From IMG/VR virus record IMGVR_UViG_3300030673_000004, positions 62,001-126,000 of that record: a stretch of DNA of 64,000 nucleotides, one strand, 5' to 3'. Below are positions 36,123 through 49,780 of this stretch, one piece after another. A program made the position numbers and the translations under genes. The notes below the pieces were generated by a model that saw only the letters and a list, made by a program, of their open reading frames with translations, did no database searches and was not told where the DNA came from. The number at the start of each line of letters is the position of its first letter. The stretch's first letter is position 1.

Positions 36123-36475
36123 TTTCTTTGAAAGGTTGGTCATGGAAAATGTTGTAGTGGATTCTCCTTGTGAGAAGCTGGCAGATTTTGCGTTAAGTAT
36201 GCTTGAGTTTAATTTCTCTTTAGGTCCGTTTCCTCTTCAAGGTTTGCTTGATCGCGGTATTTATCTTGATGATGTCCTTCGTGATCCTTTGTGTGTTTTT
36301 AATGAACGCTAAGGTGGTGTAGAATGCCAATGTCTGAAGAAGAAATCCGTGAATGGGAAGAAACTCGTGATCTTGAGAAAGAGATCATAGCTGGTGTTGA
36401 TGAGTTCCTTAAGACGGGACCTGCTCGTATTACTCAAGTTCGTCGTGAGATTAAGCAAGAGTCCTAAGAACTAAC

Positions 36476-36547
36476 TGGGGCGTAGTTCAATGGCAGTAAC
36501 AACGGTTTTTGGAGCCGTATATGCAGGTTCGATCCCTGCCACCCCAA
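36476..36547 (+). tRNA. tRNA-Gln(TTG)
   Basis: TGGGGCG/CACCCCA; ACGGT-TTTTGGA-GCCGT. Confidence 0.9.
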
Positions 36548-36562
36548 CTTTTACGTTACTGA

Positions 36563-36633
36563 TGCCCTTTCGTCCAATGGCAAGACACTGCTCTCTGGAA
36601 GCAGCTATCCTCGTTCGAATCGGGGAAGGGCAA
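36563..36633 (+). tRNA. tRNA-Gln(CTG)
   Basis: TGCCCTT/AAGGGCA; CTGCT-CTCTGGA-AGCAG. Confidence 0.92.
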
Positions 36634-36841
36634 TTCTTTTGGTGTGCTGGAATAAGACAGTAAGAGATGGTTATGAGTCAGAGTAGCTGCTGATTACTTA
36701 GCCTGTAAGCTACTGCTACAAAGAAATATTTAGTAGTTTGGATACGGCAGTATGTTCAGCTATCCTACTAGAGCAACGAACGGTATCCTGCCGGGTATTG
36801 GTTTACTTTGTCGAGATGCCTAGCGTGCTGAGGTGTGGGTT

Positions 36842-36914
36842 GGGTTTATAACACAATTGGTTAGTGTAGCGCCCTTTTAAGGCGCGAATCTGAGTTCAAA
36901 CCTCAGTGGACCCA
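36842..36914 (+). tRNA. tRNA-Lys(TTT)
   Basis: GGGTTTA/TGGACCC; GCGCC-CTTTTAA-GGCGC. Confidence 0.92.
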
Positions 36915-37125
36915 TTATTTGTGATTAAGCTACGCAGTGTCTAAGCAGTTAGACAAAATGTGAAAAGATTGGCGCACTTTTGTCGTTAATCTGGAGTAGC
37001 AAGATTAGCGTGCTGTACGTGCGATTGGTATTTAGGATATTACCTATCTTCCTTCCTACTTGTCCGGCTGTTCTTTTCTGTTGGTTTCCTGGGCCAACAT
37101 TAACGTATAACTTAGGTACTTATCT

Positions 37126-37434
37126 ATGGATATCTTAAATAAGCGTATTAGTCCAGAAGCATTTGGGGTATACGTGGGTCGTCCTTCTCGTTGGGGAAAT
37201 CCTTTTGAGATATGTCCTGGAGTAACTAGGGAAGCTGCTTGTTCAGCGTTTGAATCTTGGGCGTTTTCTCCAGAACAAGCATCGTTTCGGGAAGATGTTC
37301 GTCAACATCTTCGAGGTAACAATTTAATTTGTTGGTGCTTTCCTAAACGTTGTCATGCAGAAACGTTACGGAAAATAGCGTTAACAAAAACAGATGCTGA
37401 CTTGTTTAGAGTTGCACCTCTGTTTGGTTTGTAA
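37126..37434 (+). CDS. DUF4326-like protein
   Basis: YVGRPSRWGNPF...LRGNNLICWCFPKRCHAETL. Confidence 0.85.
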   Translation: MDILNKRISPEAFGVYVGRPSRWGNPFEICPGVTREAACSAFESWAFSPEQASFREDVRQHLRGNNLICWCFPKRCHAETLRKIALTKTDADLFRVAPLFGL

Positions 37435-37438
37435 ATGC

Positions 37439-37512
37439 GCCTTGTTAGCTCAATCGGATAGAGCACCTGATTACGAATCAGGAGGTTGAGCGTTCGAATC
37501 GCTCATAAGGCA
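37439..37512 (+). tRNA. tRNA-Arg(ACG)
   Basis: GCCTTGT/ATAAGGC; CCTGA-TTACGAA-TCAGG. Confidence 0.93.
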
Positions 37513-37532
37513 TTTTGTAGGAGGAGGTATAC

Positions 37533-37913
37533 ATGAATCCGAATGGTCGTAAGCGTAAGCCTCGCACAACAGGTGGAGAGATTAGTGGCTTTGCTTTGGA
37601 TTGTCATGGGAATCCTTGGGGATTGAGTCCACGTATTCGACGCAAGCTGAATGCGCGTATCGCTCAAGGTCTCTGTGCCGCTTGTGGAAAGAACCCTTGC
37701 GCGTGTAAATCTTTTCGCGTTGATACTGAAGAGCGTACTTTCTTTTACGGTGAGACGGAGAGGGAACGCCTGCAACGGAAGGTACTTAAGCCCGAACTAC
37801 AAGGCATTAACGGTTGTGATCATTTTCGAGCTGGTGGCTTTGGACAGCGTGACCCGAACGATTTGCCTGCACAATATCTAAGACAGGATCCGCGCACACC
37901 TATAGAGGAATGA
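37533..37913 (+). CDS. Basic hypothetical protein with Cys cluster
   Basis: GGAGG RBS; CAACGKNPCAC. Confidence 0.55.
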   Translation: MNPNGRKRKPRTTGGEISGFALDCHGNPWGLSPRIRRKLNARIAQGLCAACGKNPCACKSFRVDTEERTFFYGETERERLQRKVLKPELQGINGCDHFRAGGFGQRDPNDLPAQYLRQDPRTPIEE

Positions 37914-37916
37914 TAT

Positions 37917-38201
37917 ATGTCAAAAGTAACCGTTGAACAGGCTGTGACTGTTCTAAATGAAGCTCTTGCTTTAGATCCAAAGGCCATAGGTGCCTTACTG
38001 GCTACACGCATTTCCTGTAATGCCGAGTTGTCTGAACATCCAACAGTTCAAGTTTGCGAGGATGCTCCTGGTAAAACTACTGTAGGTATTCTAGGTTTGC
38101 TCAATGGTATTTTTGGTGTTACATCTAAGGGAAATGGTTTTATTAAGGCATCCCTTAGCGATTCTGGTGCTGTAGAATCATTTCATGCTAGTGGTTCCTA
38201 A
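37917..38201 (+). CDS. Hypothetical protein
   Basis: GAGGA RBS; 94 aa. Confidence 0.7.
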   Translation: MSKVTVEQAVTVLNEALALDPKAIGALLATRISCNAELSEHPTVQVCEDAPGKTTVGILGLLNGIFGVTSKGNGFIKASLSDSGAVESFHASGS

Positions 38202-38252
38202 TTACGCTGGTGGAGCTCGATGAGACGGGGATAGCATCATCACTATTACTAC

Positions 38253-38325
38253 TGGCTTGTAGCTCAGTGGATAGAGCAACGGACTTCTAATCCGTGGGTC
38301 GAGAGTTCAAGTCTCTCCAGGCCAA
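38253..38325 (+). tRNA. tRNA-Arg(TCT)
   Basis: TGGCTTG/CAGGCCA; ACGGA-CTTCTAA-TCCGT. Confidence 0.93.
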
Positions 38326-38328
38326 TTT

Positions 38329-38402
38329 GTCTGCATAGCTCAACTGGATAGAGCGCAAGTTTCCTAAATTTGAGGTTGATCGTTCAATTCGATCTGCAGA
38401 CA
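38329..38402 (+). tRNA. tRNA-Arg(CCT)
   Basis: GTCTGCA/TGCAGAC; CAAGT-TTCCTAA-ATTTG. Confidence 0.92.
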
Positions 38403-38450
38403 TGTTTGTAAATTAACGGTAGAGACACTCACTTGGACTGGAGTTAACTA

Positions 38451-39038
38451 GTGACCTACCCGAACGAAAAATATGTTGAAAAGTTTCAAAGCCTGATGCA
38501 CAGTAACCGTGGTCAGGCTTCTGTTGTTTCTGGGATACTGGGTCTCCCTTTAACTCAAGTTATTTATGCTTGTTTTTATTTGCGGGGTTTGCCTACAATT
38601 CTTAGTGATATATTTCCACAAGCTGCTGAGCGTGATACGTCAGGTATTGATTTTTACTGGGAATTCACAGATGAGCATAAATCTGTTCTTTCTACATTTT
38701 ATCTTGAATCTGGATTTAAGCGTAATGATATATGTACATTTTTTAATATAGCTCGTGGTAGTGCTACATCTTTTTTCTCGCGACAATTAGGTACTTTGCG
38801 TAAGCAAGGTAACGCCTACATGACAGATGATCACAAGATTATTCGGCATAAGTTAGCTTTTGATATGAGAATAGCCTTTACAGATTTGATTGATAGGTTA
38901 TCTTTATTAGAAACCGCTGCTGAGCGGGCTAGTAATGCAACACATGCATCTGACGTAGTTGTTACTCCTGATGCACCAGCAGTACCTAAGCAGAAGTCTT
39001 GGTATTCGCGATTCTTGGAGGTTATTCATGTACGATGA
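38451..39038 (+). CDS. Hypothetical protein (possible HTH)
   Basis: TGGAG RBS with GTG start; GFKRNDICTFFNIARGSA is HTH-like. Confidence 0.6.
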   Translation: MTYPNEKYVEKFQSLMHSNRGQASVVSGILGLPLTQVIYACFYLRGLPTILSDIFPQAAERDTSGIDFYWEFTDEHKSVLSTFYLESGFKRNDICTFFNIARGSATSFFSRQLGTLRKQGNAYMTDDHKIIRHKLAFDMRIAFTDLIDRLSLLETAAERASNATHASDVVVTPDAPAVPKQKSWYSRFLEVIHVR

Positions 39039-39267
39039 TATTAAGGCCAAGGTACTATCCTTGGCCTCTGATGTTTCTGGGATGCCTGAGGAGACTATTC
39101 GTAAAAGTGGTTACTTATGTAACGTCATGGAGTATGAAGTTTACATACAGCTACTTCCTGTTTTAGAAGCATTTTTTCATATTAAGTACGATATGCGTAA
39201 GTATGAAATAGATAGCATTGAGGGCTTGTGTCTTTTGACGCGGGATTTGATTTTGATACCCGCTTAA
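39028..39267 (+). CDS. Small protein with acyl-carrier-like N-terminus
   Basis: GGAGG RBS; MYDDIKAKVLSLASDVSG loosely ACP-like but lacks the DSL motif. Confidence 0.55.
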   Translation: MYDDIKAKVLSLASDVSGMPEETIRKSGYLCNVMEYEVYIQLLPVLEAFFHIKYDMRKYEIDSIEGLCLLTRDLILIPA

Positions 39268-39281
39268 CGTAAATTTAATCT

Positions 39282-39911
39282 ATGATTTTCACACAAGCTA
39301 TTTTAGACCTACAGACAGCCTTGCGTGCTGCTGGTTATCATGTTGAAGAGACACCTGCTGAGTCTTCTGGGTGGCTTGCCTATTTGCCGGATCGGGATAC
39401 GACATTAAAGTGCTGTCATAGCAGTGGTAAACCACCTGCTCTATGCATTACAGCCGATGATATCCAGCTTCCGACTACTTCTTACAAGGCTGCTACCTTC
39501 TCTATTCGTGGGCAGGCTGGTGAGTCGGAAGATACATGGATGCAGATTCAGGTATACAGTGTAGCCTTTAAGGCACCTGACGATGTCATGCGTGCTATTC
39601 CGCTCTCTGCTGAATTGTGCCGTTCTGCGTGGAATGCTGTCGTAACTGCTGTAACTCCCGTTTTGCCCGTTCAGGATACATCTATCTGTTATGACGATTA
39701 TCCTGATGTTGTATATGATGAGTGTTTTAATTCTTATCGTAAACCGCGACAATGTACACTTGGTTTTGACTTGGCTCTCCCTAGTAGTTGTACTGAGTGC
39801 CACAAACCTCTACTTTGGAATCGTCCCACTAATAGGCGTCCACCTCATTTGCCATTTTGTAGTAAGGTTTGTGCTTCGAACTTTAATGGTCATGATTTTG
39901 GGCGCAGATAA
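39282..39911 (+). CDS. Hypothetical protein with C-terminal Cys4 zinc finger
   Basis: CTECHKPLLW...PFCSKVC. Confidence 0.65.
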   Translation: MIFTQAILDLQTALRAAGYHVEETPAESSGWLAYLPDRDTTLKCCHSSGKPPALCITADDIQLPTTSYKAATFSIRGQAGESEDTWMQIQVYSVAFKAPDDVMRAIPLSAELCRSAWNAVVTAVTPVLPVQDTSICYDDYPDVVYDECFNSYRKPRQCTLGFDLALPSSCTECHKPLLWNRPTNRRPPHLPFCSKVCASNFNGHDFGRR

Positions 39912-39917
39912 GCATTT

Positions 39918-40133
39918 GTGTTTTTTGACGATAGGAAATATATGCTTGAATTCAAAACTGCTGCTGAGGAAGCTGCCTATTATGAACGCGAGAAGATACA
40001 GAAAGCCTTAATGGGCTTAGATCTTGATCGTTCTGTTTCTGTGATTATGCGAGACGTGCTGGTTAAACTGCACGGCAAGATAAATCCAGCGTCTGTTCAA
40101 AAGTATTTAGTGACAGAGTTGGGTATACTGTAA
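39918..40133 (+). CDS. Small hypothetical protein (weak GatB/YqeY C-terminal resemblance)
   Basis: VIMRDVLVKLHGKINPASVQKYL. Confidence 0.45.
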   Translation: MFFDDRKYMLEFKTAAEEAAYYEREKIQKALMGLDLDRSVSVIMRDVLVKLHGKINPASVQKYLVTELGIL

Positions 40134-40433
40134 GTGCTTGGTTTGCTCTTCTGTGATCTAAAGTTTTGTTTTTTGTAGAAAACTCTTGCATCTGTCTAAA
40201 TTTTGTTGTATACTTCTTTCTGTAGACACGACCTTGTGTCTCAGCACACTTTACTAGATAAAAGAAAATGACTCTCTCACATCCAACAGTCCCGACAATG
40301 CATCTAAGCTCCTGGCTTATGTTGCTATCGTTTATGCTGTTTATTTGTGTGAGTCCTTCATTTTCTTGTTGATCTAGCTAACCTAGTCATCTAAGAAGAA
40401 AGAGGGAGCCTCACACAAGCCTCCCTCCCAACT

Positions 40434-40505
40434 GACGTTGTGGTTGAGTGGCTTAAACAGCAGTCTGCAAAACTGTCTACGCGGGTTCGAATCCCGCCAA
40501 CGTCT
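40434..40505 (+). tRNA. tRNA-Cys(GCA)
   Basis: GACGTTG/CAACGTC U73; GCAGT-CTGCAAA-ACTGT. Confidence 0.93.
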
Positions 40506-40561
40506 TGCGAGATATCCGAGATATCTTATTACAATTTAGGTTACATAGTAACCTTCCGGGT

Positions 40562-40634
40562 GTGGCCGTAGCTCAATTGGTAGAGCTTCTGTTTGTGGAA
40601 CAGACGGTTATGGGTTCAAATCCCATCGGTCACC
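40562..40634 (+). tRNA. tRNA-His(GTG)
   Basis: GTGGCCG/CGGTCAC C73; TCTGT-TTGTGGA-ACAGA; the genomic -1 base is T, not G. Confidence 0.9.
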
Positions 40635-40687
40635 TGATACGGGAGTATCGTCTTTGACATTTTTGACTCTGTTTGGAGTTAGTGTTT

Positions 40688-40769
40688 GCGCAGATGGTGA
40701 AACTGGTAACCACGTTCGTTTCAGAGGCGAATGGAGCAATCCTTGAGGGTTCAAGTCCCTCTCTGTGCA
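40688..40769 (+). tRNA. tRNA-Leu(CAG)
   Basis: GCGCAGA/TCTGTGC A; loop TTCAGAG; variable arm GGA-GCAA-TCC. Confidence 0.92.
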
Positions 40770-40779
40770 ATCTAGATAT

Positions 40780-40851
40780 GCCCTCGTAGCTGAGGTGGTT
40801 TAGCGCTGGACTGAAAATCCGGGTACATTGGTTCGATTCCAATCGTGGGCA
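40780..40851 (+). tRNA. tRNA-Phe(GAA)
   Basis: CTGGA-CTGAAAA-TCCGG; ATTGG-TTCGATT-CCAAT. Confidence 0.92.
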
Positions 40852-40860
40852 CTTGTTACT

Positions 40861-40942
40861 GCGGAGATGGTGAAATTGGTAACCACGCTGCCCTAAGAAG
40901 GCGGTGGAGCAATCCTTGAGGGTTCAAGTCCCTCTTTCCGCA
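40861..40942 (+). tRNA. tRNA-Leu(AAG)
   Basis: GCGGAGA/TTTCCGC A; CTGCC-CTAAGAA-GGCGG; body nearly identical to Leu(CAG) at 40688. Confidence 0.92.
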
Positions 40943-40953
40943 CTTGTTGTGAT

Positions 40954-41027
40954 AGACGTGTAGCTCAATTGGCTAGAGTTGCAGACTCCAAATCTGCCGG
41001 ATGTAGGTTCAACTCCTACTGCGTCTG
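40954..41027 (+). tRNA. tRNA-Trp(CCA)
   Basis: AGACGTG/TGCGTCT G73; GCAGA-CTCCAAA-TCTGC. Confidence 0.92.
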
Positions 41028-41083
41028 TTTTATTGTAAATGAAGTCTTGCCAGGTGTCTGGCGTCTTCTTAACTTAGGAATGT

Positions 41084-42331
41084 ATGCCTGATACAAAAGT
41101 TGCTTTGCATGTAGAAATTCCTGATGATATTCTGAAGTTGATCCAAGGTAAAGCAAACATATTGATTCATGGTCGTGCTGGTACAGGTAAGTCAACTATT
41201 TTGCGAGCAATAACTGCTAAATACCAAAATAGTGTTGTTTTGTCTCCTACGGGCATAGCAGCATTAAATGTGGGTGGTCAAACGATTCATTCATTTTTTG
41301 GTTTAGGCTTTGGTTTTCTGCAGCCTAAAGATGTGCGTTCTTGCTATCGTCAAAAATCCGTGCTGGAGAAGCATCCGATCATTATTATTGATGAAGTATC
41401 TATGGTACGCTCTGATGTCTTTACCGCGATAGACGTAGCCTTAAGGAAGACTCTTGGTGTTAAGCGTCCTTTTGGTGGCCTTCAGGTAATACTGCTTGGT
41501 GATACAGGTCAACTACCTCCTGTTGTTGTTTCAAACGAAAAAGCATTCTTTCCTGATGGAACATCTATGTTTTTTCGTTCTCAGTCTTTTGCCGATGCTC
41601 TTTTTGAGCATGTTGAACTAAACCATGTGTATAGGCAGACACATGCCGGGTTTATTGAGTTTTTGACCCGTATTAGGAATCTGTCTGTGACTCCTCGTGA
41701 CATGCACGATTTTAATGCACGTGTTTCTGTGTGTAATACAGAAGAGTCTTTAGGTGATCATATAATTCTATGTTTAACCAATAGAGCTGCCGAAGAGGTG
41801 AATGCTTCTAGATATCAAGAAATCCAATCTCCTGAGCATGTGTATCATGCAAACATCACAGGTTCTATAGCTGAAAGGGATTTTCCTACAGCCGAGTCCT
41901 TGAGATTGAAATGTGGCACTAAAGTGCTGATGCTTAGAAATGATAGTGATGGTCGTTGGGTTAATGGTACCATGGCTGTTGTTAGTAAGCTTTTGCCTCG
42001 TCAGATCTGGGTGACGATAAAAGGTAAGGAACATGAAGTTACTAAAGAAGTTTGGGAGAAGTTTAAGTACGACGTATCTGGTCAGGCTATACGTAAAACA
42101 GTAGCGGGGTCATTTGAACAATTTCCCTTGAAGCTTGCTTGGGCAATTACGGTACATAAGTCGCAAGGTATGACTTTAAGTCGTTTTCATTTGGATTTAA
42201 GTACTCCTCCTTTTGAGCACGGGCAACTTTACGTGGCCCTATCGCGTGCTGAGGGTCTTGATAGTATCTCATTGTCCCGTGCTCTTGAGATGACTGATGT
42301 AAAAGTTGATCGTGACTTGCTTTTAACCTAA
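41084..42331 (+). CDS. PIF1/RecD-like SF1B helicase
   Basis: GRAGTGKS, SPTGIAA, GQTIHSFF, IIDEVSM, GDTGQLPPV, YRQ, LRNDS..WVNG, QFPLKLAWAITVHKSQG, GQLYVALSR. Confidence 0.95.
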   Translation: MPDTKVALHVEIPDDILKLIQGKANILIHGRAGTGKSTILRAITAKYQNSVVLSPTGIAALNVGGQTIHSFFGLGFGFLQPKDVRSCYRQKSVLEKHPIIIIDEVSMVRSDVFTAIDVALRKTLGVKRPFGGLQVILLGDTGQLPPVVVSNEKAFFPDGTSMFFRSQSFADALFEHVELNHVYRQTHAGFIEFLTRIRNLSVTPRDMHDFNARVSVCNTEESLGDHIILCLTNRAAEEVNASRYQEIQSPEHVYHANITGSIAERDFPTAESLRLKCGTKVLMLRNDSDGRWVNGTMAVVSKLLPRQIWVTIKGKEHEVTKEVWEKFKYDVSGQAIRKTVAGSFEQFPLKLAWAITVHKSQGMTLSRFHLDLSTPPFEHGQLYVALSRAEGLDSISLSRALEMTDVKVDRDLLLT

Positions 42332-42349
42332 TTTTAGTTTGGAGTAACT

Positions 42350-42559
42350 ATGTCAGTTGAATTTATCTATGAAGAAGGATGTCTTCAGGCTGAAGAGGAA
42401 ATCATTTCTGAAGTACGTGAAATTCTACGTGCTCGGGTGAAGGCAGAGGCTATTAAGTCTGATGCCCGAGATGCCAAAAATAGACTTGTTGTTAAGAAAG
42501 AACATGTTCCTGATCTATCTAAGATAGGTTCTCATCTATTTGACGTGATTTGCTTGTAA
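42350..42559 (+). CDS. Small hypothetical protein
   Basis: GGAG RBS; 69 aa. Confidence 0.65.
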   Translation: MSVEFIYEEGCLQAEEEIISEVREILRARVKAEAIKSDARDAKNRLVVKKEHVPDLSKIGSHLFDVICL

Positions 42560-42572
42560 ATTTTAGACTTAA

Positions 42573-42645
42573 CGGGATGTAGCTCAACTGGTAGAGTACC
42601 TGCTTTGGGAGCAGGTTGTTGCAGGTTCAAATCCTGTCATCCCGA
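42573..42645 (+). tRNA. tRNA-Pro(TGG)
   Basis: CGGGATG/CATCCCG A; CCTGC-TTTGGGA-GCAGG. Confidence 0.93.
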
Positions 42646-42708
42646 CTTTTCTGGAGGTGCTTGTTTGTATTTTGATCTTACTTGGTAAATTGTTTTATAT
42701 TGGGTTAT

Positions 42709-42791
42709 GCCTAGGTGGTGGAATTTGGTAGACACATGCGCCTTAGGAGCGCACGCCGCGAGGTATGAGGGTTCAAGTCCCTCCCTGGGTA
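42709..42791 (+). tRNA. tRNA-Leu(TAG)
   Basis: GCCTAGG/CCTGGGT A; TGCGC-CTTAGGA-GCGCA. Confidence 0.93.
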
Positions 42792-42808
42792 CTCGTTGAA
42801 AGGATACA

Positions 42809-43414
42809 TTGATGCCTGATGATGTGTTTGACACTACAGAGACGCTGGTAATTAATTTATTCGGCGGTCCTTGTTCCGGTAAGTCTACGCTAGCTGCTCA
42901 ACTCTTTAGTTCTCTGAAAGCTCGTGGCGTGTCTTGCGAGTATAACGTGGAATACGCTAAGCGAAAAACGTGGGAGCGCTCCTTGTTTATGCTTCAGGAT
43001 CAATTTTACGTATCGGCAAAACAGCATCATGAGCTCCTTATGGCATCACAGGGATGTTCTGTTATTGTCACAGATTCTCCTTTGATTCTTGGTGCTGCCT
43101 ATATGTCTCCTCGGGATGCTGAATCTGGCTTAGCTGATACTCTTTGTCAGTATTCTCGTCTCTTCAAGAACTTCAACGTTTTCCTTGATAGATCCACACT
43201 TAAATACGATACTGTTGGTAGAAATCAAGAATATACTGAAGCCATTGCGTTGGATCGTAGAATCTTACAAATCCTTCATGATTATCCTATAATGGCTGGC
43301 TGTCCTTGGACAAATGCTGAAGGTATCGCTATGGTCCTTACAAATAATAAAACACCTCCTGAACTGGCTGCTCATGTGATAAATACTTTGAGTACCTATG
43401 GTGTGATTTTGTAA
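42809..43414 (+). CDS. P-loop kinase (NadR/AAA_28-like)
   Basis: INLFGGPCSGKST, EYAK, IVTDSPL, GRNQ. Confidence 0.85.
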   Translation: MMPDDVFDTTETLVINLFGGPCSGKSTLAAQLFSSLKARGVSCEYNVEYAKRKTWERSLFMLQDQFYVSAKQHHELLMASQGCSVIVTDSPLILGAAYMSPRDAESGLADTLCQYSRLFKNFNVFLDRSTLKYDTVGRNQEYTEAIALDRRILQILHDYPIMAGCPWTNAEGIAMVLTNNKTPPELAAHVINTLSTYGVIL

Positions 43415-43443
43415 ATAGTTTGTGTTTGAGTTTGGAGGAACAT

Positions 43444-43713
43444 ATGCCTGATGTATCTGTTGGTGTTGCGATAACATTGAAAATTGGAGATAGCTCGTTT
43501 GAACTATCTAGAGATGATGCTTTAGCTGTATATACTACTCTTGGGGCTGCTCTAGGTATTCCTGCTGTGCAAAGTTCCCTGCCTGCTTTTGCTCCCTGTA
43601 CAACTCCTTGGAAGTATCCTATGTATCCTGCGCCGTATTCGCCGGATATTGTTTATACTACTGCAGGTCCTGTAACTGTATCTGTGTCCGCTCCTGTGAT
43701 GCAGCAAGATTAG
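43444..43713 (+). CDS. Hypothetical protein
   Basis: GGAGG RBS; 89 aa. Confidence 0.6.
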   Translation: MPDVSVGVAITLKIGDSSFELSRDDALAVYTTLGAALGIPAVQSSLPAFAPCTTPWKYPMYPAPYSPDIVYTTAGPVTVSVSAPVMQQD

Positions 43714-43723
43714 TTTTGAGTTT

Positions 43724-43806
43724 GGAGGGATAGGCTAATTGGTAAGTCAGTTCTCTTGAAAAGAACCGTCCTAACGGACTTGGGGGTTCGAGACCCTCTC
43801 CCTCCG
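43724..43806 (+). tRNA. tRNA-Ser(TGA)
   Basis: GGAGGGA/TCCCTCC G73; GTTCT-CTTGAAA-AGAAC; variable arm GTCC-TAAC-GGAC. Confidence 0.93.
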
Positions 43807-43874
43807 CTGTAAGTAGCTTGATTCGAAGAGTTTCAATAGTACCTATTGGTTATGTAAAGTTATAACATCTTATT

Positions 43875-44081
43875 ATGGTTACTTCCTTTTTGATTTTCAA
43901 ATTGTGGTTGGCTCCTCTATCCGTTAATTCAGATGATGCTTTTGGAGCTAAGCTTACATTACAAGTTGGTTCAGATCTGTGGTTAAAGGTTCGTGTGAAA
44001 GATGAGGGTGTTGATCTGAATAAACTGCAGCTCAAAGATGGCACACCTAAATTTCGCTTCTGGGCAGAAACGGATTTTTAG
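43875..44081 (+). CDS. Small hypothetical protein
   Basis: 68-aa ORF between tRNAs; start uncertain. Confidence 0.4.
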   Translation: MVTSFLIFKLWLAPLSVNSDDAFGAKLTLQVGSDLWLKVRVKDEGVDLNKLQLKDGTPKFRFWAETDF

Positions 44082-44138
44082 TATGGTTTATATCAGTATT
44101 GAAGAAACACCAATAGAATTACTCGATGCTTTAGATGA

Positions 44139-44333
44139 ATGCTTTTGGGATATTTTAGCATGACGGCTACTCTCCAAAATATAAAGTATTGGTTGATCTA
44201 TTCTTCTGTGATTTTTATTTTGCTTTTAGGTTTGTTGCACTATTTAGATATCTTGAGCCTTTTAGGCATATCTGTTGTTCTCAGGTACTTGTGCGGTATT
44301 TGCAATAGTATTTATAGGAATACCTGTCGTTAG
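44139..44333 (+). CDS. Small hydrophobic protein
   Basis: 64 aa, two hydrophobic stretches. Confidence 0.4.
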   Translation: MLLGYFSMTATLQNIKYWLIYSSVIFILLLGLLHYLDILSLLGISVVLRYLCGICNSIYRNTCR

Positions 44334-44338
44334 CCTTT

Positions 44339-44421
44339 GGAGAAGTCGCTCAATTGGTAGAGCAGCACTCTCGAAAAGTGCCGTCCTAACGGATCTGTGG
44401 GTTCAAGTCCCTCCTTCTCCG
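44339..44421 (+). tRNA. tRNA-Ser(CGA)
   Basis: GGAGAAG/CTTCTCC G73; GCACT-CTCGAAA-AGTGC. Confidence 0.93.
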
Positions 44422-44545
44422 CTCTGTGTGCCAAAGGTGCTATCCACGCATTTTCGACATATTTTGTGTTTTTGCCTTGACAAGCCTACATGTTTACTCT
44501 ATTTTTCAAGTATCGTTCACCCTAACCTTACTCGAAAGTTGGTTC

Positions 44546-45226
44546 ATGTACGCTGCTAAGGTAGTTAAACTTGATTTGGATAATGCTGGTATTCGTGTTA
44601 TCCCGTGGGAAGAGGCGGAGAGGCTGCAGGTTGCTATGAAGGAGCAGTTTGGTACTTCCTTGCGTGGCTTTTCTCATATTTCAAAGAAAGCCTGTCCTAC
44701 ATTGGAGACGATGTGCTCTTTGAAGCTGTCGTGTGGCACCGTGAGCATCCCCTTTGCTTCTGTGCCTGAGTTGTACGAGCATATCACCCGAGCTGTTGAT
44801 CGCAAGACTTGGAAGCATCGGTCTACTAAGGAACTCCTGAAAGACTCTAAGTGGCGTGCTGCTCATCCGGAGCGTGTTAAGAGTCTTAACACCTCATTAC
44901 GCAGCGAACACACTGCTGTCGTTACAACCGCTCCTACTCAGACGGCTGCTGACTCTACACCAAGGGCCGACGTTCTGTCTCTGGCTACTGCTATTAGCGA
45001 CTCAGGAACATCCGCTCTTTTTGATGCCCTGTCTCGTTCTGAGCAGGAACGTCTTGTTTTTGTTGTGTACAAGACGGGTGCTTATACCTATGATGGTCTT
45101 GCTGAGTACCTCCATGTGTCTACTCAGGTGATCAAGAACAACCTGTGTCAGTATAGGAAGCATCACGGTATTCCCCCTCTGCCATCTGGAAAGAAATCTA
45201 TGAATGTTCTTTCGCTGAACATTTAA
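44546..45226 (+). CDS. Hypothetical protein with C-terminal HTH, paralog A
   Basis: Start re-set to MYAAKVVKLDLDNAG; GAYTYDGLAEYLHVSTQVIK HTH. Confidence 0.75.
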   Translation: MYAAKVVKLDLDNAGIRVIPWEEAERLQVAMKEQFGTSLRGFSHISKKACPTLETMCSLKLSCGTVSIPFASVPELYEHITRAVDRKTWKHRSTKELLKDSKWRAAHPERVKSLNTSLRSEHTAVVTTAPTQTAADSTPRADVLSLATAISDSGTSALFDALSRSEQERLVFVVYKTGAYTYDGLAEYLHVSTQVIKNNLCQYRKHHGIPPLPSGKKSMNVLSLNI

Positions 45227-45232
45227 GTCGTT

Positions 45233-45319
45233 GGAAGCGTAAAGCGTAATTGGTTGACCGCCCTGGTTTAGAAAACCAGTATCCGAAAGGGTTTGTAGGT
45301 TCGAGTCCTACCGCTTCCG
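45233..45319 (+). tRNA. tRNA-Ser(AGA)
   Basis: GGAAGCG/CGCTTCC G73; CTGGT-TTAGAAA-ACCAG; variable arm ATCC-GAAA-GGGT. Confidence 0.9.
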
Positions 45320-45349
45320 TTTTTAATTCACCTGAACTTGAGGTATCAG

Positions 45350-46000
45350 ATGCGTATCAATAAACTTATCCAGTTTGACTTGGATAATGCTGGAACTTAT
45401 GTTGTTAGCTGGGATGAGGCTTGCGCTCTCCATACGGCATTACAGCCGGTTGCGTTCCAAGTCCGTAAGCTTCCTACAAGTGTCGATACTAAGGTGTGTT
45501 TGGCTACATCCTGTACTCTACAGTTGGCTACTACATCTACTGTAATTCCTTATGAGCAAGTTCCTGCATTGTATAATGCTCTGTCTGAGGAACTGGGTAT
45601 CAAAACTGCGCGTAAGGGCCGACGCAGATCTTATGATGAGTTGCTTGCTGATGTCTCTTGGTGCTCTAAGAATCCAGATCGTGTCAAAAAGGCTCGTGAG
45701 TATGTTCAGAGACGCCGCTTGTCTGCAGTGGTTCCTAAACGATCAGCACCCACAATTGCTCTAGCTCAACAGATTCACGAATCGGGCTCATCTCTTTTGT
45801 TTCACTCGTTGTCTCAAGGTGATCGTGATGCTATGATTTCCGGGTTGTATAGCACAGGATCCTATACATATAAAGAGCTTGCTGCTTATCTCTGGGTGTC
45901 TATTAGTACCATTCAGAAACACTTACAGCAGTATCGTCGGTGCTCTGGGCTGCCTAAGTATATAAGACCTACTAGAGCTGATCTCACTCTGGCTTTGTGA
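45350..46000 (+). CDS. Hypothetical protein with C-terminal HTH, paralog B
   Basis: MRINKLIQFDLDNAG; GSYTYKELAAYLWVSISTIQK; colinear with paralog A. Confidence 0.75.
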   Translation: MRINKLIQFDLDNAGTYVVSWDEACALHTALQPVAFQVRKLPTSVDTKVCLATSCTLQLATTSTVIPYEQVPALYNALSEELGIKTARKGRRRSYDELLADVSWCSKNPDRVKKAREYVQRRRLSAVVPKRSAPTIALAQQIHESGSSLLFHSLSQGDRDAMISGLYSTGSYTYKELAAYLWVSISTIQKHLQQYRRCSGLPKYIRPTRADLTLAL

Positions 46001-46007
46001 TATTCTT

Positions 46008-46306
46008 GGGCCTTTAGCTCAGTTGATTTGTAAACATGAGCTTGGAATCAAGATGTAGGTAACGCATACGAAAAGTGCAGAGACTAACGCCCTATGCAAT
46101 TCGCAGTAACAACTACATTAGTGCTGACATCTATACCCGTTGTGCTGCTGTAGTTTATTAGTCTTCAATAATGCACAAGTTTCTGTAAATAATAAGTGTG
46201 GGGATTGCAGCTCAATGGTTCGTAGCACCGGCCTTATAAGCCGTTGGTTGTGGGTTCGACTCCCATCAGTCCCACTTGGTCCTGGGTTCAAGTCCCAGAA
46301 GGCCCA
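46008..46306 (+). pseudogene. Split tRNA: 5' piece 46008-46025 and 3' piece ~46277-46306 around a ~250-nt insert
   Basis: GGGCCTT-TA-GCTCAGTTG pairs with TGGTC-CTGGG-TTCAAGT-CCCAG-AAGGCCC-A; its own anticodon arm is absent. Confidence 0.8.
46201..46274 (+). tRNA. tRNA-Ile(TAT), nested inside the split tRNA
   Basis: GGGATTG/CAGTCCC A; CGGC-CTTATAA-GCCG; GTGGG-TTCGACT-CCCAT. Confidence 0.85.
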
Positions 46307-46348
46307 CTTGGATTGTAAATAACTCTTAACTTTATGTTTGGAGTTTTT

Positions 46349-46741
46349 ATGATGCCTCTTACGTTTACAATAGATTTTGATGGTACTTGTGTAGATCACA
46401 GGTTTCCTAGGATAGGTCCATCGCTACCTGATGCTGTAGAAACAATGCAGGAGATGGCTCGTAGAGGTCACCGGCTGATCTTAGATACTATGCGCTCTGA
46501 TTTTGAGGGTCCCTATCTAACTGAGGCTATTGCTTGGTTTCGCTCTAATGACATTCCACTGTTCGCTGTTAATGAAAATAAGGAACAGTTATCTTGGACA
46601 ACAAGTCCAAAGATTCACTGTGACTACAGCATAGATGATCGAAATTTGGGATCACCTTTAATGCAGGTACCTTGGATGAAGAGCCCTGGTGTTGACTGGG
46701 AGCAAGTACATGCTTTGTTGTTGCAGGATACTCGGTACTAG
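46349..46741 (+). CDS. HAD-superfamily hydrolase
   Basis: IDFDGTC, LILDTMR, AVNEN, SPKIHCDYSIDDRNLG. Confidence 0.88.
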   Translation: MMPLTFTIDFDGTCVDHRFPRIGPSLPDAVETMQEMARRGHRLILDTMRSDFEGPYLTEAIAWFRSNDIPLFAVNENKEQLSWTTSPKIHCDYSIDDRNLGSPLMQVPWMKSPGVDWEQVHALLLQDTRY

Positions 46742-46744
46742 CTT

Positions 46745-47038
46745 ATGGCACGCTCTACGTTTCCTATAAATTCAGCTATCCTTGTATTTGAACAAGGATC
46801 TTCTGATTTTAAGCGTGCTACATCTGCTGATAGCTTGGTAGCATCTATGTCCGATGTGCTTCAAGATTTGCGCAACGTAGTAAAGCATGATAGGTTACAG
46901 TCTGGTGCCTTTGACTTCAGTCGGCTATCTGAGAAATATGATGTCTCCTTAGCTACTATCCAGTGTATTGTTGATGAGGTTCGTCGTGGCATGTATGAAA
47001 CTCTAAGTAATCAAGGTATTGATATAGATTCAATTTAA
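46745..47038 (+). CDS. Hypothetical protein
   Basis: 97 aa in the gene run. Confidence 0.65.
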   Translation: MARSTFPINSAILVFEQGSSDFKRATSADSLVASMSDVLQDLRNVVKHDRLQSGAFDFSRLSEKYDVSLATIQCIVDEVRRGMYETLSNQGIDIDSI

Positions 47039-47325
47039 TGAAAATCTGGGAGGACTTGATGTCACACGATTCTTTACACATGCCAGAGTGTAACTTTCCG
47101 CATGGTGACTTAGGTCAGCCCGGTTGCATTTGTATTGTTGCAAATCGTAATTATGTCAAAGATCTTGAGGATAAAGCTTGTGCTTTTGAGCAGATTAAAT
47201 CTGTTGTTGAAAAGCTGCAGCAGGATTTAACGCAGAAGCATTATAATCGCTGGGATTGCTTAGACGCAGCTATGCGAATAATTGATGTTGCTTCTGTTGC
47301 TACAACAGGAAAGTACGTAGACTAA
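47038..47325 (+). CDS. Hypothetical protein
   Basis: 95 aa, overlapping stop/start. Confidence 0.6.
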   Translation: MKIWEDLMSHDSLHMPECNFPHGDLGQPGCICIVANRNYVKDLEDKACAFEQIKSVVEKLQQDLTQKHYNRWDCLDAAMRIIDVASVATTGKYVD

Positions 47326-47326
47326 A

Positions 47327-47399
47327 CGCGCATTAGCTCATTAGGTAGAGCGGGATTTTCATAAGGTCTAGGTGGCAAGTTCGAATCTTGCATGCGCGA
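47327..47399 (+). tRNA. tRNA with CAT anticodon (elongator Met or Ile2)
   Basis: CGCGCAT/ATGCGCG A, paired 1-72; loop TTCATAA; weak anticodon stem. Confidence 0.8.
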
Positions 47400-47449
47400 C
47401 TTTAGTTGTAAATAAGCCTTGTACCATTAACTACGAGGCACATATATAT

Positions 47450-47887
47450 ATGTCAGATGAGTCCCTTACAAAAGTTCAGCATCGTGTATCTTCTATCCTG
47501 CATGTGCAGGTGGGTGAATCAGGTGTCTGGGAGCCTACTACAGATCAGCTTGATGCTCTAGTCAGTCAGTTTGTTTCGGCAGTAAACACAAATGTAGCTC
47601 TTGCAGTAGTAGCTACTCGTAAGGGCGTGACTGCTCAGTGTATCCATATTCCAGATACCGATGCTGCTATACTGCATGTTGAGGCAGGCGCACCTGGATG
47701 GGAGCCGTTACCATCCGAGCTTAAAGATCTAACAGATTTGTTTGAGAAAGCAGCTACTTCTGACGGTAGTATTGCTGTAGTAGCTACTCGTACCGGTGTG
47801 ACTGCTCATGTTGTGGATTTATCCAATCCTGATTCTGAGGCATTTCCTGAGTTTCTATATGACACTGATTGCGAGGATGCGTCATGA
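47450..47887 (+). CDS. Protein with two tandem ~60-aa repeats
   Basis: ILHV..G..G.WEP....L..L...F..A.....AVVATR.GVTA occurs twice. Confidence 0.8.
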   Translation: MSDESLTKVQHRVSSILHVQVGESGVWEPTTDQLDALVSQFVSAVNTNVALAVVATRKGVTAQCIHIPDTDAAILHVEAGAPGWEPLPSELKDLTDLFEKAATSDGSIAVVATRTGVTAHVVDLSNPDSEAFPEFLYDTDCEDAS

Positions 47888-48561
47888 ATCTCTATGAACA
47901 TGCTGTGAGCGAATTTGAGTTGCTTGAGCAGAATTTGGACAGTGATCCAGATAAGCATCCTATCATTTTAGAATTCAAAGCTGAAATTCTTTCTCTAGTT
48001 AAGCGTTTTGCGGACTCTGGTCCATCTGGTGGTTCTGCTCCCTTTTATGCGTCTGCCGTATCTCGGGCTATTAAAGATCTCTTTATGTTTGATCCTATTG
48101 GTCCCCTCACAGGAGATGATAGTGAGTGGGTAGATACATCTGAAATTAGTGGCCTGTCTGAAGGAACGCTATGGCAGAATAAGCGGCTATCTTCTGTGTT
48201 TAAGGATGGTAATGATCCGGCTCATTACTTGGATGCTGTTGTATTCCAAGGTGAGTCTGATTATGATCGTTTCAGTGGTCATGTTGATAATGTTTCCAGT
48301 GTTTGGTGTATTAAGAGTTTTCCTTTTAGACCCAAAACATTCACAATAGACGTGTATCGTGTTCCTAGTGAGACAGATCCAGATCGTGTCAGTTGCCGTG
48401 AAGGTGATTATTTATACCACATTAAAGATCCTTCACAGTTAGAGGCTGTTCGCGACTACTATGATGAGAAGATATCTCGGATATCTTCAATAGACTCAAC
48501 ATCGGCTGTAGGCGCGCAAGTTGATGCTGTTTGCTGCCCAAAGACAGTAAAGTTGGACTAA
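47884..48561 (+). CDS. Hypothetical protein
   Basis: GAGG RBS; GPSGGSA, PIGPLTGDDSEW, WQNKRLSSVFK. Confidence 0.75.
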   Translation: MNLYEHAVSEFELLEQNLDSDPDKHPIILEFKAEILSLVKRFADSGPSGGSAPFYASAVSRAIKDLFMFDPIGPLTGDDSEWVDTSEISGLSEGTLWQNKRLSSVFKDGNDPAHYLDAVVFQGESDYDRFSGHVDNVSSVWCIKSFPFRPKTFTIDVYRVPSETDPDRVSCREGDYLYHIKDPSQLEAVRDYYDEKISRISSIDSTSAVGAQVDAVCCPKTVKLD

Positions 48562-48574
48562 TTTTGTTTGCATC

Positions 48575-48603
48575 TTGACATTTTCAGATATTGGTAGTAT
48601 ATT
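48575..48603 (+). promoter_or_regulatory. sigma70 promoter
   Basis: TTGACA-17-TATATT directly upstream of tRNA-fMet. Confidence 0.75.
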
Positions 48604-48609
48604 TCTTTT

Positions 48610-48682
48610 AGCGGGATAGAGCAGTTGGTAGCTTGCTTGGTTCATACCCAAGAGGTCGTTGGTTCAAATCCAACTCCCGCAA
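48610..48682 (+). tRNA. Initiator tRNA-fMet(CAT)
   Basis: A1:A72 mismatch, GAGCAG..GGTAGC D-arm; CTTGG-TTCATAC-CCAAG (only two of the three G-C pairs). Confidence 0.85.
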
Positions 48683-48704
48683 CTTTTCTTAGTGCATACT
48701 TAAA

Positions 48705-48793
48705 CTCAATATACTGTTAGTTTTCGGATACATCTTCGCCATACATGAAGACCTCCTGAAAGGGTAATCCGATTACGTAAGTTTGTTATTGAG
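48705..48793 (+). ncRNA. Y-RNA-like element 6 (divergent, remote)
   Basis: CTCAATA/TATTGAG stem; TACTGTT..TTTCGGATACATC...TCCGAT..TTTGTT matches elements 4 and 5. Confidence 0.55.
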
Positions 48794-48802
48794 GTTACTT
48801 GA

Positions 48803-48875
48803 GGGCGGATAGATTAGCGGCTAAATCCATACGTTTACACCGTATTGACCGTGGGTTCGAGTCCCACTTCGCCCA
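48803..48875 (+). tRNA. tRNA-Val(TAC)
   Basis: GGGCGGA/TTCGCCC A; ATACG-TTTACAC-CGTAT. Confidence 0.92.
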
Positions 48876-48894
48876 TTAAGTGTAAATAGTACCT

Positions 48895-49725
48895 ATGGCT
48901 AAATGTTTGAATTGTGGTACTGATTTGCTTGGAAAATATCAAAGAAAATTTTGTTCTCACTCATGTTCTGCTACGTATAACCAAACAGGTCGTTCTAGCA
49001 ACAATAAAAATACACGAGTTAACAAGATTTGTTTTCAGAAAGCGCATATAGCACAATGTTCTATATGCGGAAAGACAATTAAACGCGAATCAACATGTTG
49101 TGCCCCTTGTGCTAAGCGTCAGCGTAGATGTAATTCATATATCTCACATGGTCCCTATGCTGGGTGTTTAACATCCTTGCCATACATTGCGTCGATACAT
49201 GGACGACGTATTGTTCGGTATACTGATGCTTTAGGTAAGAAAAGAAGTACATCTTTAGCGCGCTATCTAATGTCACTTTACCTTGGTTATATACCAACTA
49301 ATGCGTGGGATGTAGATCATATAGATCAAGATCCTACAAATGATCGTATATCTAATCTACAGTTGATATCAAAACAAGCTAATCTGTCTAAGGGTGGTAA
49401 ACATAATTCACGGCATGTTATTCATGCAACGTGCGCTGTATGTGGCGCTGTTGTTCAAAAACCGGGTCTTATTGCTTATTATCCGAGGGATACTATTTTT
49501 ACTTGTTCTCGTATGTGTGCTGGTCATATCTCACACATGCGAAAAACTATGTCTCTTTCAGAGCTTCATTTACGTAATGCTGCTTTTGATGTTGATGTGC
49601 CTAGACAAAGTGTTCCTATCATTGAATATAAGCGTATTGAGAGATTATCACCAGATTTAGAATTCGTATTGAATATCCTGCTTGCTTATGGGCAGGACTA
49701 CTATCCTAGTAAATGTTCTGCTTGA
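48895..49725 (+). CDS. HNH (homing-type) endonuclease with Zn fingers
   Basis: CLNCG..KFCSHSC; SLARYLM; WDVDHIDQDPTNDRISNLQLIS; CAVCG..FTCSRMC. Confidence 0.88.
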   Translation: MAKCLNCGTDLLGKYQRKFCSHSCSATYNQTGRSSNNKNTRVNKICFQKAHIAQCSICGKTIKRESTCCAPCAKRQRRCNSYISHGPYAGCLTSLPYIASIHGRRIVRYTDALGKKRSTSLARYLMSLYLGYIPTNAWDVDHIDQDPTNDRISNLQLISKQANLSKGGKHNSRHVIHATCAVCGAVVQKPGLIAYYPRDTIFTCSRMCAGHISHMRKTMSLSELHLRNAAFDVDVPRQSVPIIEYKRIERLSPDLEFVLNILLAYGQDYYPSKCSA

Positions 49726-49746
49726 AGTAACTACGACTGGTCCTAA

Positions 49747-49780
49747 GGGGAGGTAGCTTCGGTTGCCTCCCTTTTCTTTT
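49747..49780 (+). terminator. Intrinsic terminator
   Basis: GGGAGGTAGC-TTCG-GTTGCCTCCC-TTTTCTTTT. Confidence 0.85.

What the first reader, a model, noticed from the sequence alone, without database searches (positions are those of the whole stretch)
40861..45319. Rare A34 tRNAs: Leu(AAG) and Ser(AGA) replace the usual GAG/GGA
Seen: intact Leu-AAG (40861) and Ser-AGA (45233) and no Leu-GAG or Ser-GGA in the window. Leu-AAG shares most of its body with Leu-CAG, implying recent anticodon switching. CTT and TCT codons are visibly frequent in the T-rich genes. Established: most bacteria use A34 (inosine) only for Arg-ACG, with Leu-AAG in a few lineages. Inference: adaptation to skew-driven codon bias and/or escape from anticodon nucleases.
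Basis: partly seen in the sequence, partly recalled or inferred. Interest (0 to 1): 0.62.

Follow-up and report, generated by a model that had tools for sequence, protein, structure and literature searches.

The report
A34 Leu and Ser tRNAs in phage
A 375 kb jumbo phage from peat and freshwater carries tRNA-Leu(AAG) and an oddly built tRNA-Ser(AGA) in place of the usual G-starting anticodons, and a survey shows that such supposedly forbidden tRNAs recur in uncultivated phages, so this case is real but not unique.

Summary
The observation mostly holds. The window lies in a complete 375,537 bp phage genome whose 34 or more tRNA genes all sit at window 29533-55819.

- **Leu(AAG), 40861-40943:** a clean class II tRNA.
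- **Ser(AGA), 45233-45319:** real but atypical. ARAGORN misses it and Rfam tRNA scores it at threshold. It has three extra bases in the D region, yet it is the window's best hit to a model built from 64 phage Ser(AGA) genes.
- **G34 partners:** no Leu(GAG) or Ser(GGA) exists anywhere in the genome.
- **Deaminase:** no tadA-like gene is present.

Leu(AAG) and Leu(CAG) are diverged paralogs, not the product of a recent anticodon switch. The T-ending codon bias is real, but it is equal in all eight four-codon boxes and on both gene strands, so it is not driven by skew. Escape from anticodon nucleases could not be tested.

These tRNAs are also not unique to this phage. Capped IMG/VR scans gave 124 Leu(AAG) and 88 Ser(AGA) genes, whereas reviews call them absent from phages.

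Most likely they act as Watson-Crick readers of CUU and UCU. Ser(AGA) probably stays unmodified, because its loop fits no known TadA motif. Modification state, charging and host were not determined.

The parts
40861..40943 (+). tRNA-Leu(AAG), class II, anticodon loop CUAAGAA, discriminator A, no encoded CCA
   Evidence: ARAGORN; Rfam tRNA 52.8 bits; cloverleaf MFE fold; loop read; unchanged in a freshwater contig spanning 40755-41230
45233..45319 (+). tRNA-Ser(AGA), class II, loop UUAGAAA, discriminator G, with a 3-base excess in the D region (one base before the D stem, two in the D loop)
   Evidence: Rfam tRNA 29.5 bits; fold; nearest relatives and indels; custom model R1 57.6 bits, top hit in the window; not called by ARAGORN
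40687..40770 (+). tRNA-Leu(CAG), paralog of Leu(AAG) sharing its D, variable and T arms
42709..42792 (+). tRNA-Leu(UAG), third reader of the CUN box
43724..43807 (+). tRNA-Ser(UGA), UCN-box partner
44339..44422 (+). tRNA-Ser(CGA), UCN-box partner
37439..37512 (+). tRNA-Arg(ACG), the canonical A34 tRNA, loop UUACGAA, sole CGN-box tRNA
29533..55819 (+). The phage's whole tRNA array (34 ARAGORN genes plus Ser(AGA)), interspersed with small ORFs, a tmRNA, a Ro60/TROVE protein, an RNA ligase and an HNH endonuclease

Best explanation
Both genes are working phage tRNAs. They give the phage a Watson-Crick reader (A34 pairing with U3) for CUU and UCU, the most used codons of the Leu CUN and Ser UCN boxes. 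They stand alongside U34 and C34 tRNAs that read the A- and G-ending codons, and they take the place of the usual G34 tRNAs.

The tRNAs are probably transcribed with the array, finished by the phage's own CCA-adding enzyme, and charged by host LeuRS and SerRS, which do not read the anticodon.

Ser(AGA) most likely keeps an unmodified A34. Leu(AAG) stays unmodified unless the unknown host has a TadA with relaxed specificity.

Shown: the genes, their folds, the absence of G34 partners, the codon counts, the absence of a phage deaminase, the presence of a CCA-adding enzyme, and the recurrence of such tRNAs in other phages. Inferred: expression, charging, modification state and decoding range.
For: - Gene calls and folds.
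- No Leu(GAG) or Ser(GGA) in the 375 kb genome.
- The CUN box is served by UAG+CAG+AAG and the UCN box by UGA+CGA+AGA. U-ending codons are 37% and 49% of those boxes and C-ending only 13% and 16%.
- The phage encodes a PF01743 nucleotidyltransferase (88 bits), while none of its tRNA genes encodes CCA. It therefore invests in maturing these tRNAs.
- No cytidine-deaminase or TadA-fold deaminase appears in six-frame searches of the genome, with positive controls in 12-13 of 14 genomes.
- Loop motifs: Ser(AGA) UUAGAAA fits neither the E. coli-type TadA motif YUACGAA nor the streptococcal YUAMGRA. Leu(AAG) CUAAGAA fits only the latter (PMC11472039). E. coli TadA does not modify tRNA-Leu(AAG) in vitro.
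- In E. coli an engineered Ser(AGA) matures, is unmodified at A34 and is tolerated (bioRxiv 10.64898/2026.05.15.725136).
- 88 Ser(AGA) and 124 Leu(AAG) genes sit in other phage tRNA arrays, with Ser(GGA) and Leu(GAG) nearly absent beside them. This argues for selection rather than accident.
Against: - There are no RNA data. No RNA run holds the phage, so expression, charging and the state of A34 are unobserved.
- The U3 preference is equally strong for Ala, Pro, Val, Thr and Gly, where the phage has no A34 tRNA. Codon bias alone does not explain the choice of boxes.
- Ser(AGA) has a non-standard D region and scores only at threshold on the general tRNA model. It could be impaired.
- In most other phage arrays Ser(AGA) is the only UCN reader: 38 of 49 large arrays. 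That implies broader decoding there, through inosine or superwobble, than simple A:U pairing.
- The host and its TadA are unknown.
Confidence: 0.55

Rival explanations
1. Both A34 tRNAs are deaminated to inosine by the host's TadA, as Arg(ACG) is. Each then reads U-, C- and A-ending codons, which closes the gap at CUC and UCC left by the missing G34 tRNAs.
For: - The phage relies on host TadA anyway for its sole CGN tRNA, Arg(ACG).
- The Leu(AAG) loop CUAAGAA fits the relaxed YUAMGRA motif of streptococcal TadA, which fully edits tRNA-Leu(AAG).
- In many other phage arrays Ser(AGA) or Thr(AGU) is the only tRNA of its box. That is easier to understand if it reads three codons.
Against: - The Ser(AGA) loop UUAGAAA fits no known bacterial TadA motif.
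- E. coli TadA does not edit Leu(AAG) in vitro, and four-box ANN tRNAs stay unmodified in E. coli.
- There is no phage deaminase here. Among five other records carrying Leu(AAG) and/or Ser(AGA) (four with both), three of which are at least 90% complete, the only deaminase found is a dCMP deaminase.
- The capsid's nearest relatives infect Proteobacteria, where a relaxed TadA is not known.
Confidence: 0.25
2. The A34 anticodons are a counter-defence. They replace G34 tRNAs so that the phage's Leu and Ser decoders are not recognised by host anticodon nucleases that deplete the host's own tRNAs during infection.
For: - The array sits with an RNA ligase (53622-54317), a Tad3-like Thoeris inhibitor (47869-48561) and a Ro60/TROVE protein, so an RNA repair and counter-defence setting is plausible.
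- Phage tRNAs are proposed to evade anticodon nucleases through loop changes (PMC10264068).
Against: - No nuclease that targets Leu(GAG) or Ser(GGA) was identified, and the host is unknown.
- The hypothesis does not predict the match to U-ending codon use.
- Nothing in the sequence tests it.
Confidence: 0.1
3. Leu(AAG) works, but the Ser(AGA) copy in this phage is a decaying or non-functional gene. Its D-region insertions prevent proper folding, processing or charging.
For: - ARAGORN rejects it and Rfam tRNA is at threshold.
- It has three extra bases relative to the closest ARAGORN-accepted phage Ser(AGA) genes.
- UGA and CGA tRNAs already cover much of the box.
Against: - All four stems are intact, with G1-C72, G2-C71, A3-U70 and G73 as in its siblings.
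- D-stem pair 13-22 is kept by a compensatory change relative to relatives.
- It outscores the phage's other Ser tRNAs on the Ser(AGA) model.
- The sequence is identical in independent metagenomes.
- D-loop length is naturally variable in class II tRNAs (established knowledge).
Confidence: 0.15

Closest known systems
Bacterial tRNA-Leu(AAG) of Lactobacillales (Streptococcus, Lactococcus, Oenococcus)
   Same: Same anticodon. It replaces Leu(GAG), occurs in genomes that prefer U-ending codons, and has a loop matching YUAAGRA.
   Different: There it is chromosomal and fully edited to I34 by a TadA with relaxed specificity. Here it is phage-encoded, the host is unknown, and the capsid's relatives infect Proteobacteria. 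The modification state is unknown.
Mycoplasma tRNA-Thr(AGU) with unmodified A34
   Same: A four-box tRNA that works with A34 left unmodified (literature cited). It is the closest model for Ser(AGA) here.
   Different: It serves a different amino acid. In Mycoplasma it reads the whole box in a reduced genome, whereas here Ser(AGA) sits beside UGA and CGA tRNAs.
Eukaryotic tRNA-Ser(AGA) and tRNA-Leu(AAG), edited by ADAT2/3
   Same: Same anticodons and the same logic of A34 replacing G34 in four-codon boxes.
   Different: ADAT2/3 does not depend on loop sequence and is absent from bacteria. This virus is a tailed phage with a bacterial-type tmRNA and an HK97-type jumbo-phage capsid.
Large tRNA arrays of cultured phages (for example Streptomyces phage Alone3, Gordonia phage GMA2)
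   Same: Dense arrays covering nearly all amino acids. Alone3 even shares the Ro-like protein and RNA ligase placed among its tRNAs.
   Different: The cultured phages checked use canonical anticodons: Ser(GGA) and Thr(GGU) in Alone3 and Ser(UGA) in the other four, with no non-Arg A34 tRNA in the regions examined.
Uncultivated phage arrays with Ser(AGA), Leu(AAG) or Thr(AGU) in IMG/VR
   Same: The same A34 anticodons with the G34 partners missing. Four loci (L167, L178, L195, L208) carry both Leu(AAG) and Ser(AGA). The window's Ser(AGA) shares a D-arm motif with L126, L207, L210, L217 and L195.
   Different: No capsid homology to this phage was found in L167, L178, L195, L208 or L217. In most of these arrays Ser(AGA) is the only UCN tRNA, whereas here it supplements UGA and CGA. 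The window's copy has extra D-region bases.

Membership tests
tRNA (Rfam RF00005), class II Leu | Cloverleaf scoring above the family threshold, with a long variable arm | tested here: met
   Leu(AAG): 52.8 bits vs 29; ARAGORN call; fold with a variable-arm hairpin
tRNA (Rfam RF00005), class II Leu | Discriminator A73, as in bacterial tRNA-Leu (established knowledge) | tested here: met
   The base after the acceptor stem is A
tRNA (Rfam RF00005), class II Ser | Cloverleaf scoring above the family threshold | tested here: inconclusive
   Ser(AGA): 29.5 bits vs 29 in the whole-genome search. In the window scan the Sec model was kept instead, at 32.4 bits, below its threshold. ARAGORN gives no call.
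tRNA (Rfam RF00005), class II Ser | Long variable arm, G73, and G1-C72, G2-C71, A3-U70 as in bacterial tRNA-Ser | tested here: met
   Alignment with the three sibling Ser tRNAs and fold
   57.6 bits, E about 1e-14, the best hit in the window. The model has only 14 base pairs because the 5' ends aligned poorly.
TadA substrates (I34 tRNAs), E. coli type | Anticodon loop YUACGAA | tested here: not met
   Leu CUAAGAA and Ser UUAGAAA fail. Arg(ACG) UUACGAA passes (motif from PMC11472039).
TadA substrates (I34 tRNAs), streptococcal relaxed type | Anticodon loop YUAMGRA | tested here: inconclusive
   Leu(AAG) fits and Ser(AGA) does not. Whether the host has such a TadA is unknown.
TadA substrates (I34 tRNAs) | Inosine actually present at position 34 | not testable with these tools
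   No RNA run holds the phage
Phage-encoded tRNA deaminase system | A TadA or cytidine-deaminase-fold gene in the phage genome | tested here: not met
   PF14437 and PF00383 searches of the whole genome found nothing, with controls positive

The most novel reading that the evidence does not exclude
Phage tRNA arrays make systematic use of A34 tRNAs for Ser, Thr and Leu that bacteria avoid, often as the only reader of a four-codon box. These tRNAs work with A34 unmodified, giving a decoding scheme that does not depend on host wobble modifications. This phage, with U34, C34 and A34 readers for both Leu CUN and Ser UCN plus Ile(UAU), would be a clear example. If so, the textbook 'prohibited anticodon' rule fails for a large class of viruses.
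Probability: 0.3. Interest if true: 0.7.

Novelty: new member of a known kind. Interest (0 to 1): 0.5.

Why it matters
Two recent papers state that non-Arg A34 tRNAs are missing from phages as they are from bacteria, and treat this as evidence that such tRNAs are harmful (PMC8007984; bioRxiv 10.64898/2026.05.15.725136). This phage, and the hundreds of IMG/VR loci found while checking it, show that uncultivated phages do carry them.

Ser(AGA) looks far denser in viral than in cellular DNA. That makes phages a natural test bed for a long-standing question: why is unmodified A34 avoided? It could now be tested by expressing a phage array and reading position 34.

For this single window the result is more modest. 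It is a real, uncommon tRNA pair in an otherwise typical jumbo-phage array.

Tried and rejected
- **Close relatives, to test conservation.** IMG/VR scans with the PIF1-like helicase and the capsid protein found none. GenBank phages share only about 30% capsid identity and have no DNA-level match beyond single tRNAs.
- **RNA evidence for editing.** No RNA run holds the phage. There was no informative variation.
- **Cultured phages with these anticodons.** S-BM3, Ruegeria V12, RaK2, GMA2 and Alone3 all proved canonical. Two further representative queries found nothing.
- **Host inference from the tmRNA.** BLAST matched only the universal T-arm and acceptor end. The first attempt failed on a handle error. 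The tag peptide was read by eye, and its likeness to Bacteroidota tags rests on memory only.
- **Giant-virus check.** The NCLDV capsid family search found nothing, but its controls were silent too, so it is uninformative.
- **A phage TadA in other double-A34 phages.** The one deaminase found is a dCMP deaminase.
- **Ruled out.** 'Recent anticodon switch' and 'replication-skew-driven bias' are both rejected.
- **Not used.** The costly protein searches were not needed, and no alternative genetic code was applied. All three stop codons are in use and the genome is 90% coding under table 11.
Full report
**What the window is.** The window is bases 62001-126000 of a 375,537 bp IMG/VR virus record with direct terminal repeats, rated complete.
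- Near-identical DNA occurs in several peat and freshwater metagenomes. No RNA run holds it.
- The capsid protein (window 62381-63496; PHROG major head protein) is about 30% identical to capsids of jumbo phages of Proteobacteria such as NCTB, phiRSL1 and the Erwinia and Dickeya phages.
- IMG/VR scans with the helicase and the capsid protein found no close relative.
- Under table 11 the genome is about 90% coding with all three stop codons in use, so no other genetic code was invoked.
- The host is unknown.

**The observation.** ARAGORN finds 34 tRNA genes, all on the + strand between 29533 and 55819. A whole-genome Rfam search places every tRNA of the phage in that stretch.

Leu(AAG) at 40861-40943 is a clean class II tRNA: 52.8 bits on Rfam and a cloverleaf MFE fold.

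Ser(AGA) at 45233-45319 is less straightforward.
- ARAGORN does not call it, and at a relaxed threshold misfolds it.
- The Rfam tRNA model scores it 29.5 bits against a threshold of 29.
- It nonetheless folds with a 7-bp acceptor stem, a 5-bp anticodon stem with loop UUAGAAA, a variable-arm hairpin and a T arm. It shares G1-C72, G2-C71, A3-U70 and G73 with the phage's other three Ser tRNAs.
- Against its nearest relatives (L126, L207, L210, L217, L195) it has one extra base before the D stem and two in the D loop. D-stem pair 13-22 is kept by a compensatory change.
- A covariance model built from 64 distinct ARAGORN-confirmed phage Ser(AGA) genes ranks it first in the window at 57.6 bits. It is ahead of Ser(CGA) at 52.7 and Ser(UGA) at 51.2.
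- Contigs from other metagenomes reproduce the region without change.

I conclude it is a true member of a phage Ser(AGA) family with an unusual D region. Whether it functions is not proven. No Leu(GAG) or Ser(GGA) exists in the genome.

Leu(AAG) and Leu(CAG) are 66/84 identical. The D arm (16/17), variable arm (13/13) and T arm (17/17) nearly coincide. Only 2 of 10 anticodon-stem bases agree, and the acceptor stems differ. They are paralogs that have diverged, or were recombined, around the anticodon arm. They are not the product of a recent point change, and a G34-to-A34 replacement would not start from CAG in any case.

The codon bias is real: third positions are 40% T and 16% C. CTT/CTC is 2.9 and TCT/TCC is 3.1. 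However, the T/C ratio is 2.5-3.8 in all eight four-codon boxes, and it is the same for genes on either strand. It is therefore a coding-strand preference, not a replication-skew effect. By itself it does not explain why only Leu, Ser and Arg have A34 tRNAs.

**How rare these tRNAs are.** Two papers say non-Arg ANN tRNAs are absent from phages. The 2019 survey they cite gives anticodons only as a figure. I tested the claim with structure-anchored patterns on IMG/VR.

| Scan | Loci | Main result |
|---|---|---|
| Leu(AAG) pattern, IMG/VR | 118 | All confirmed by ARAGORN: 124 Leu(AAG) vs 4 Leu(GAG) among 1277 tRNAs |
| Ser(AGA) pattern, IMG/VR | 119 | 88 confirmed Ser(AGA) (64 distinct), 0 Ser(GGA), Thr(AGU) in 31 loci |
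| Neutral Leu(UAG) anchor, IMG/VR | 119 (884 tRNAs) | Leu AAG 2 vs GAG 6; Thr AGU 5 vs GGU 6; Ser AGA 0 vs GGA 9 |
| Ser(AGA) pattern, 185,579 species genomes | 120 | 15 confirmed, 9 of them in dense arrays of 10-29 tRNAs |

- The neutral sample shows that A34 tRNAs are a minority, Ser(AGA) especially, but they recur.
- If unconfirmed hits are taken as chance background, Ser(AGA) is roughly twenty-fold denser in viral than in cellular DNA. This is a rough figure.
- Four loci (L167, L178, L195, L208) carry both Leu(AAG) and Ser(AGA). They and L217 have no detectable capsid homolog of this phage, so the combination arose or spread across lineages.
- The five cultured phages checked are canonical.

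**Mechanism.** The phage serves the CUN box with UAG, CAG and AAG tRNAs and the UCN box with UGA, CGA and AGA. That gives a Watson-Crick reader for the U-, A- and G-ending codons. Only the rarest codons, the C-ending ones (13% and 16%), lack one.
- It encodes a CCA-adding-type nucleotidyltransferase, and none of its tRNA genes encodes CCA. This argues the array is meant to be used.
- It has no SerRS or LeuRS core. Host synthetases, which do not read these anticodons (established knowledge; see also the abstract of PMC11028032), would do the charging.
- It has no TadA-like or other cytidine-deaminase-fold gene. The only deaminase found in the five other A34-bearing records checked is a dCMP deaminase.

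Published motifs show that E. coli-type TadA needs YUACGAA and does not edit tRNA-Leu(AAG). Streptococcal TadA accepts YUAMGRA. The phage loops are UUACGAA for Arg, CUAAGAA for Leu and UUAGAAA for Ser. Arg(ACG) is therefore a normal substrate. Leu(AAG) is a substrate only for a relaxed TadA. Ser(AGA) fits no known bacterial specificity. In E. coli, an engineered Ser(AGA) matures unmodified and is tolerated.

My best reading is that these are dedicated readers of CUU and UCU, with Ser(AGA) unmodified and Leu(AAG) probably so (confidence 0.55).

The main rival is inosine formation by a permissive host TadA (0.25). It gains some weight from the finding that in 38 of 49 large phage arrays Ser(AGA) is the only UCN tRNA, and Thr(AGU) the only ACN tRNA in 24 of 31. 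That implies broad decoding in those phages, by inosine or by A34 superwobble.

Escape from anticodon nucleases (0.1) is compatible with the neighbouring RNA ligase and Tad3-like gene, but nothing tests it. A decayed Ser(AGA) gene (0.15) cannot be excluded.

**Verdict.** It is wrong on recent switching and on skew, and untested on nucleases. The pair is uncommon but not unique: it belongs to a recurrent and seemingly undescribed habit of uncultivated phages. I rate it a new member of a known kind, of moderate interest. The wider pattern deserves a proper census.

Noticed in passing
window 34160-34515 (+), next to tRNA-Ala(UGC) at 34067-34138: A full-length phage-encoded tmRNA (Rfam 178.7 bits) that ARAGORN did not call. 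Read by eye from the alignment, the tag is about GEEIYSYALAV. From memory, a Gly-initiated tag resembles Bacteroidota tags, which is a weak host lead.
   Followed up: partly
window 32072-33478 (+), with 31128-31198 and 33626-33732: A Ro60/TROVE-domain protein inside the tRNA array, with two sub-threshold Y-RNA-like (YrlA) hits beside it. Streptomyces phage Alone3 likewise has a Ro-like protein and an RNA ligase among its tRNAs (L362).
   Followed up: partly
window 30188-30263 (+): A tRNA-like element with a UCA anticodon in an extended anticodon stem. Rfam tRNA gives 27 bits, below threshold; relaxed ARAGORN calls it SeC(tca); the cloverleaf fold has z = -4.2. It could be an opal suppressor or a tRNA mimic, yet TGA ends 115 of 363 long ORFs.
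   Followed up: partly
window 30265-30360 (+): A 96-nt 'tRNA-???' (Rfam 36.8 bits) with normal acceptor, D and T arms but an enlarged, abnormal anticodon arm. The phage has Glu(CUC) but no Glu(UUC), although GAA is its commoner Glu codon.
   Followed up: partly
window 46201-46275 (+): tRNA-Ile(UAU), another anticodon that reviews call missing in bacteria. ATA makes up 30% of the phage's Ile codons. In the neutral IMG/VR sample Ile(UAU) occurred 9 times against Ile(GAU) 20.
   Followed up: partly
window 47869-48561, 53622-54317, 48895-49725 (+): A Tad3-like Thoeris inhibitor domain, an RNA ligase (PF09414) and an HNH endonuclease lie among the tRNA genes.
   Followed up: no
G000:C1:9473-9856 (-), outside the window: The phage encodes a CCA-adding-type nucleotidyltransferase (PF01743, 88 bits), while none of its tRNA genes encodes CCA.
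   Followed up: partly
window about 26000: Gene orientation and AT skew flip here: genes run on the - strand before it and on the + strand after it. The coding strand is T-rich on both sides.
   Followed up: partly
IMG/VR loci L119-L237: In most large arrays with Ser(AGA) it is the only UCN-box tRNA (38 of 49), and Thr(AGU) is the only ACN tRNA in 24 of 31. About half of the Ser(AGA) genes encode CCA. GC of these loci ranges from 0.38 to 0.60.
   Followed up: partly
L208 (193 kb IMG/VR contig): One array carries Leu(AAG), Ser(AGA), Pro(AGG), Arg(ACG), Ile(UAU) and a CUA-anticodon tRNA that ARAGORN labels Pyl.
   Followed up: no
L300 (Nostoc linckia) and other genome loci L257, L271, L297, L329, L360: Ser(AGA) in cellular genome assemblies lies mostly inside dense arrays of 10-29 tRNAs, the long mobile-array type, not among ordinary chromosomal tRNA genes.
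   Followed up: no
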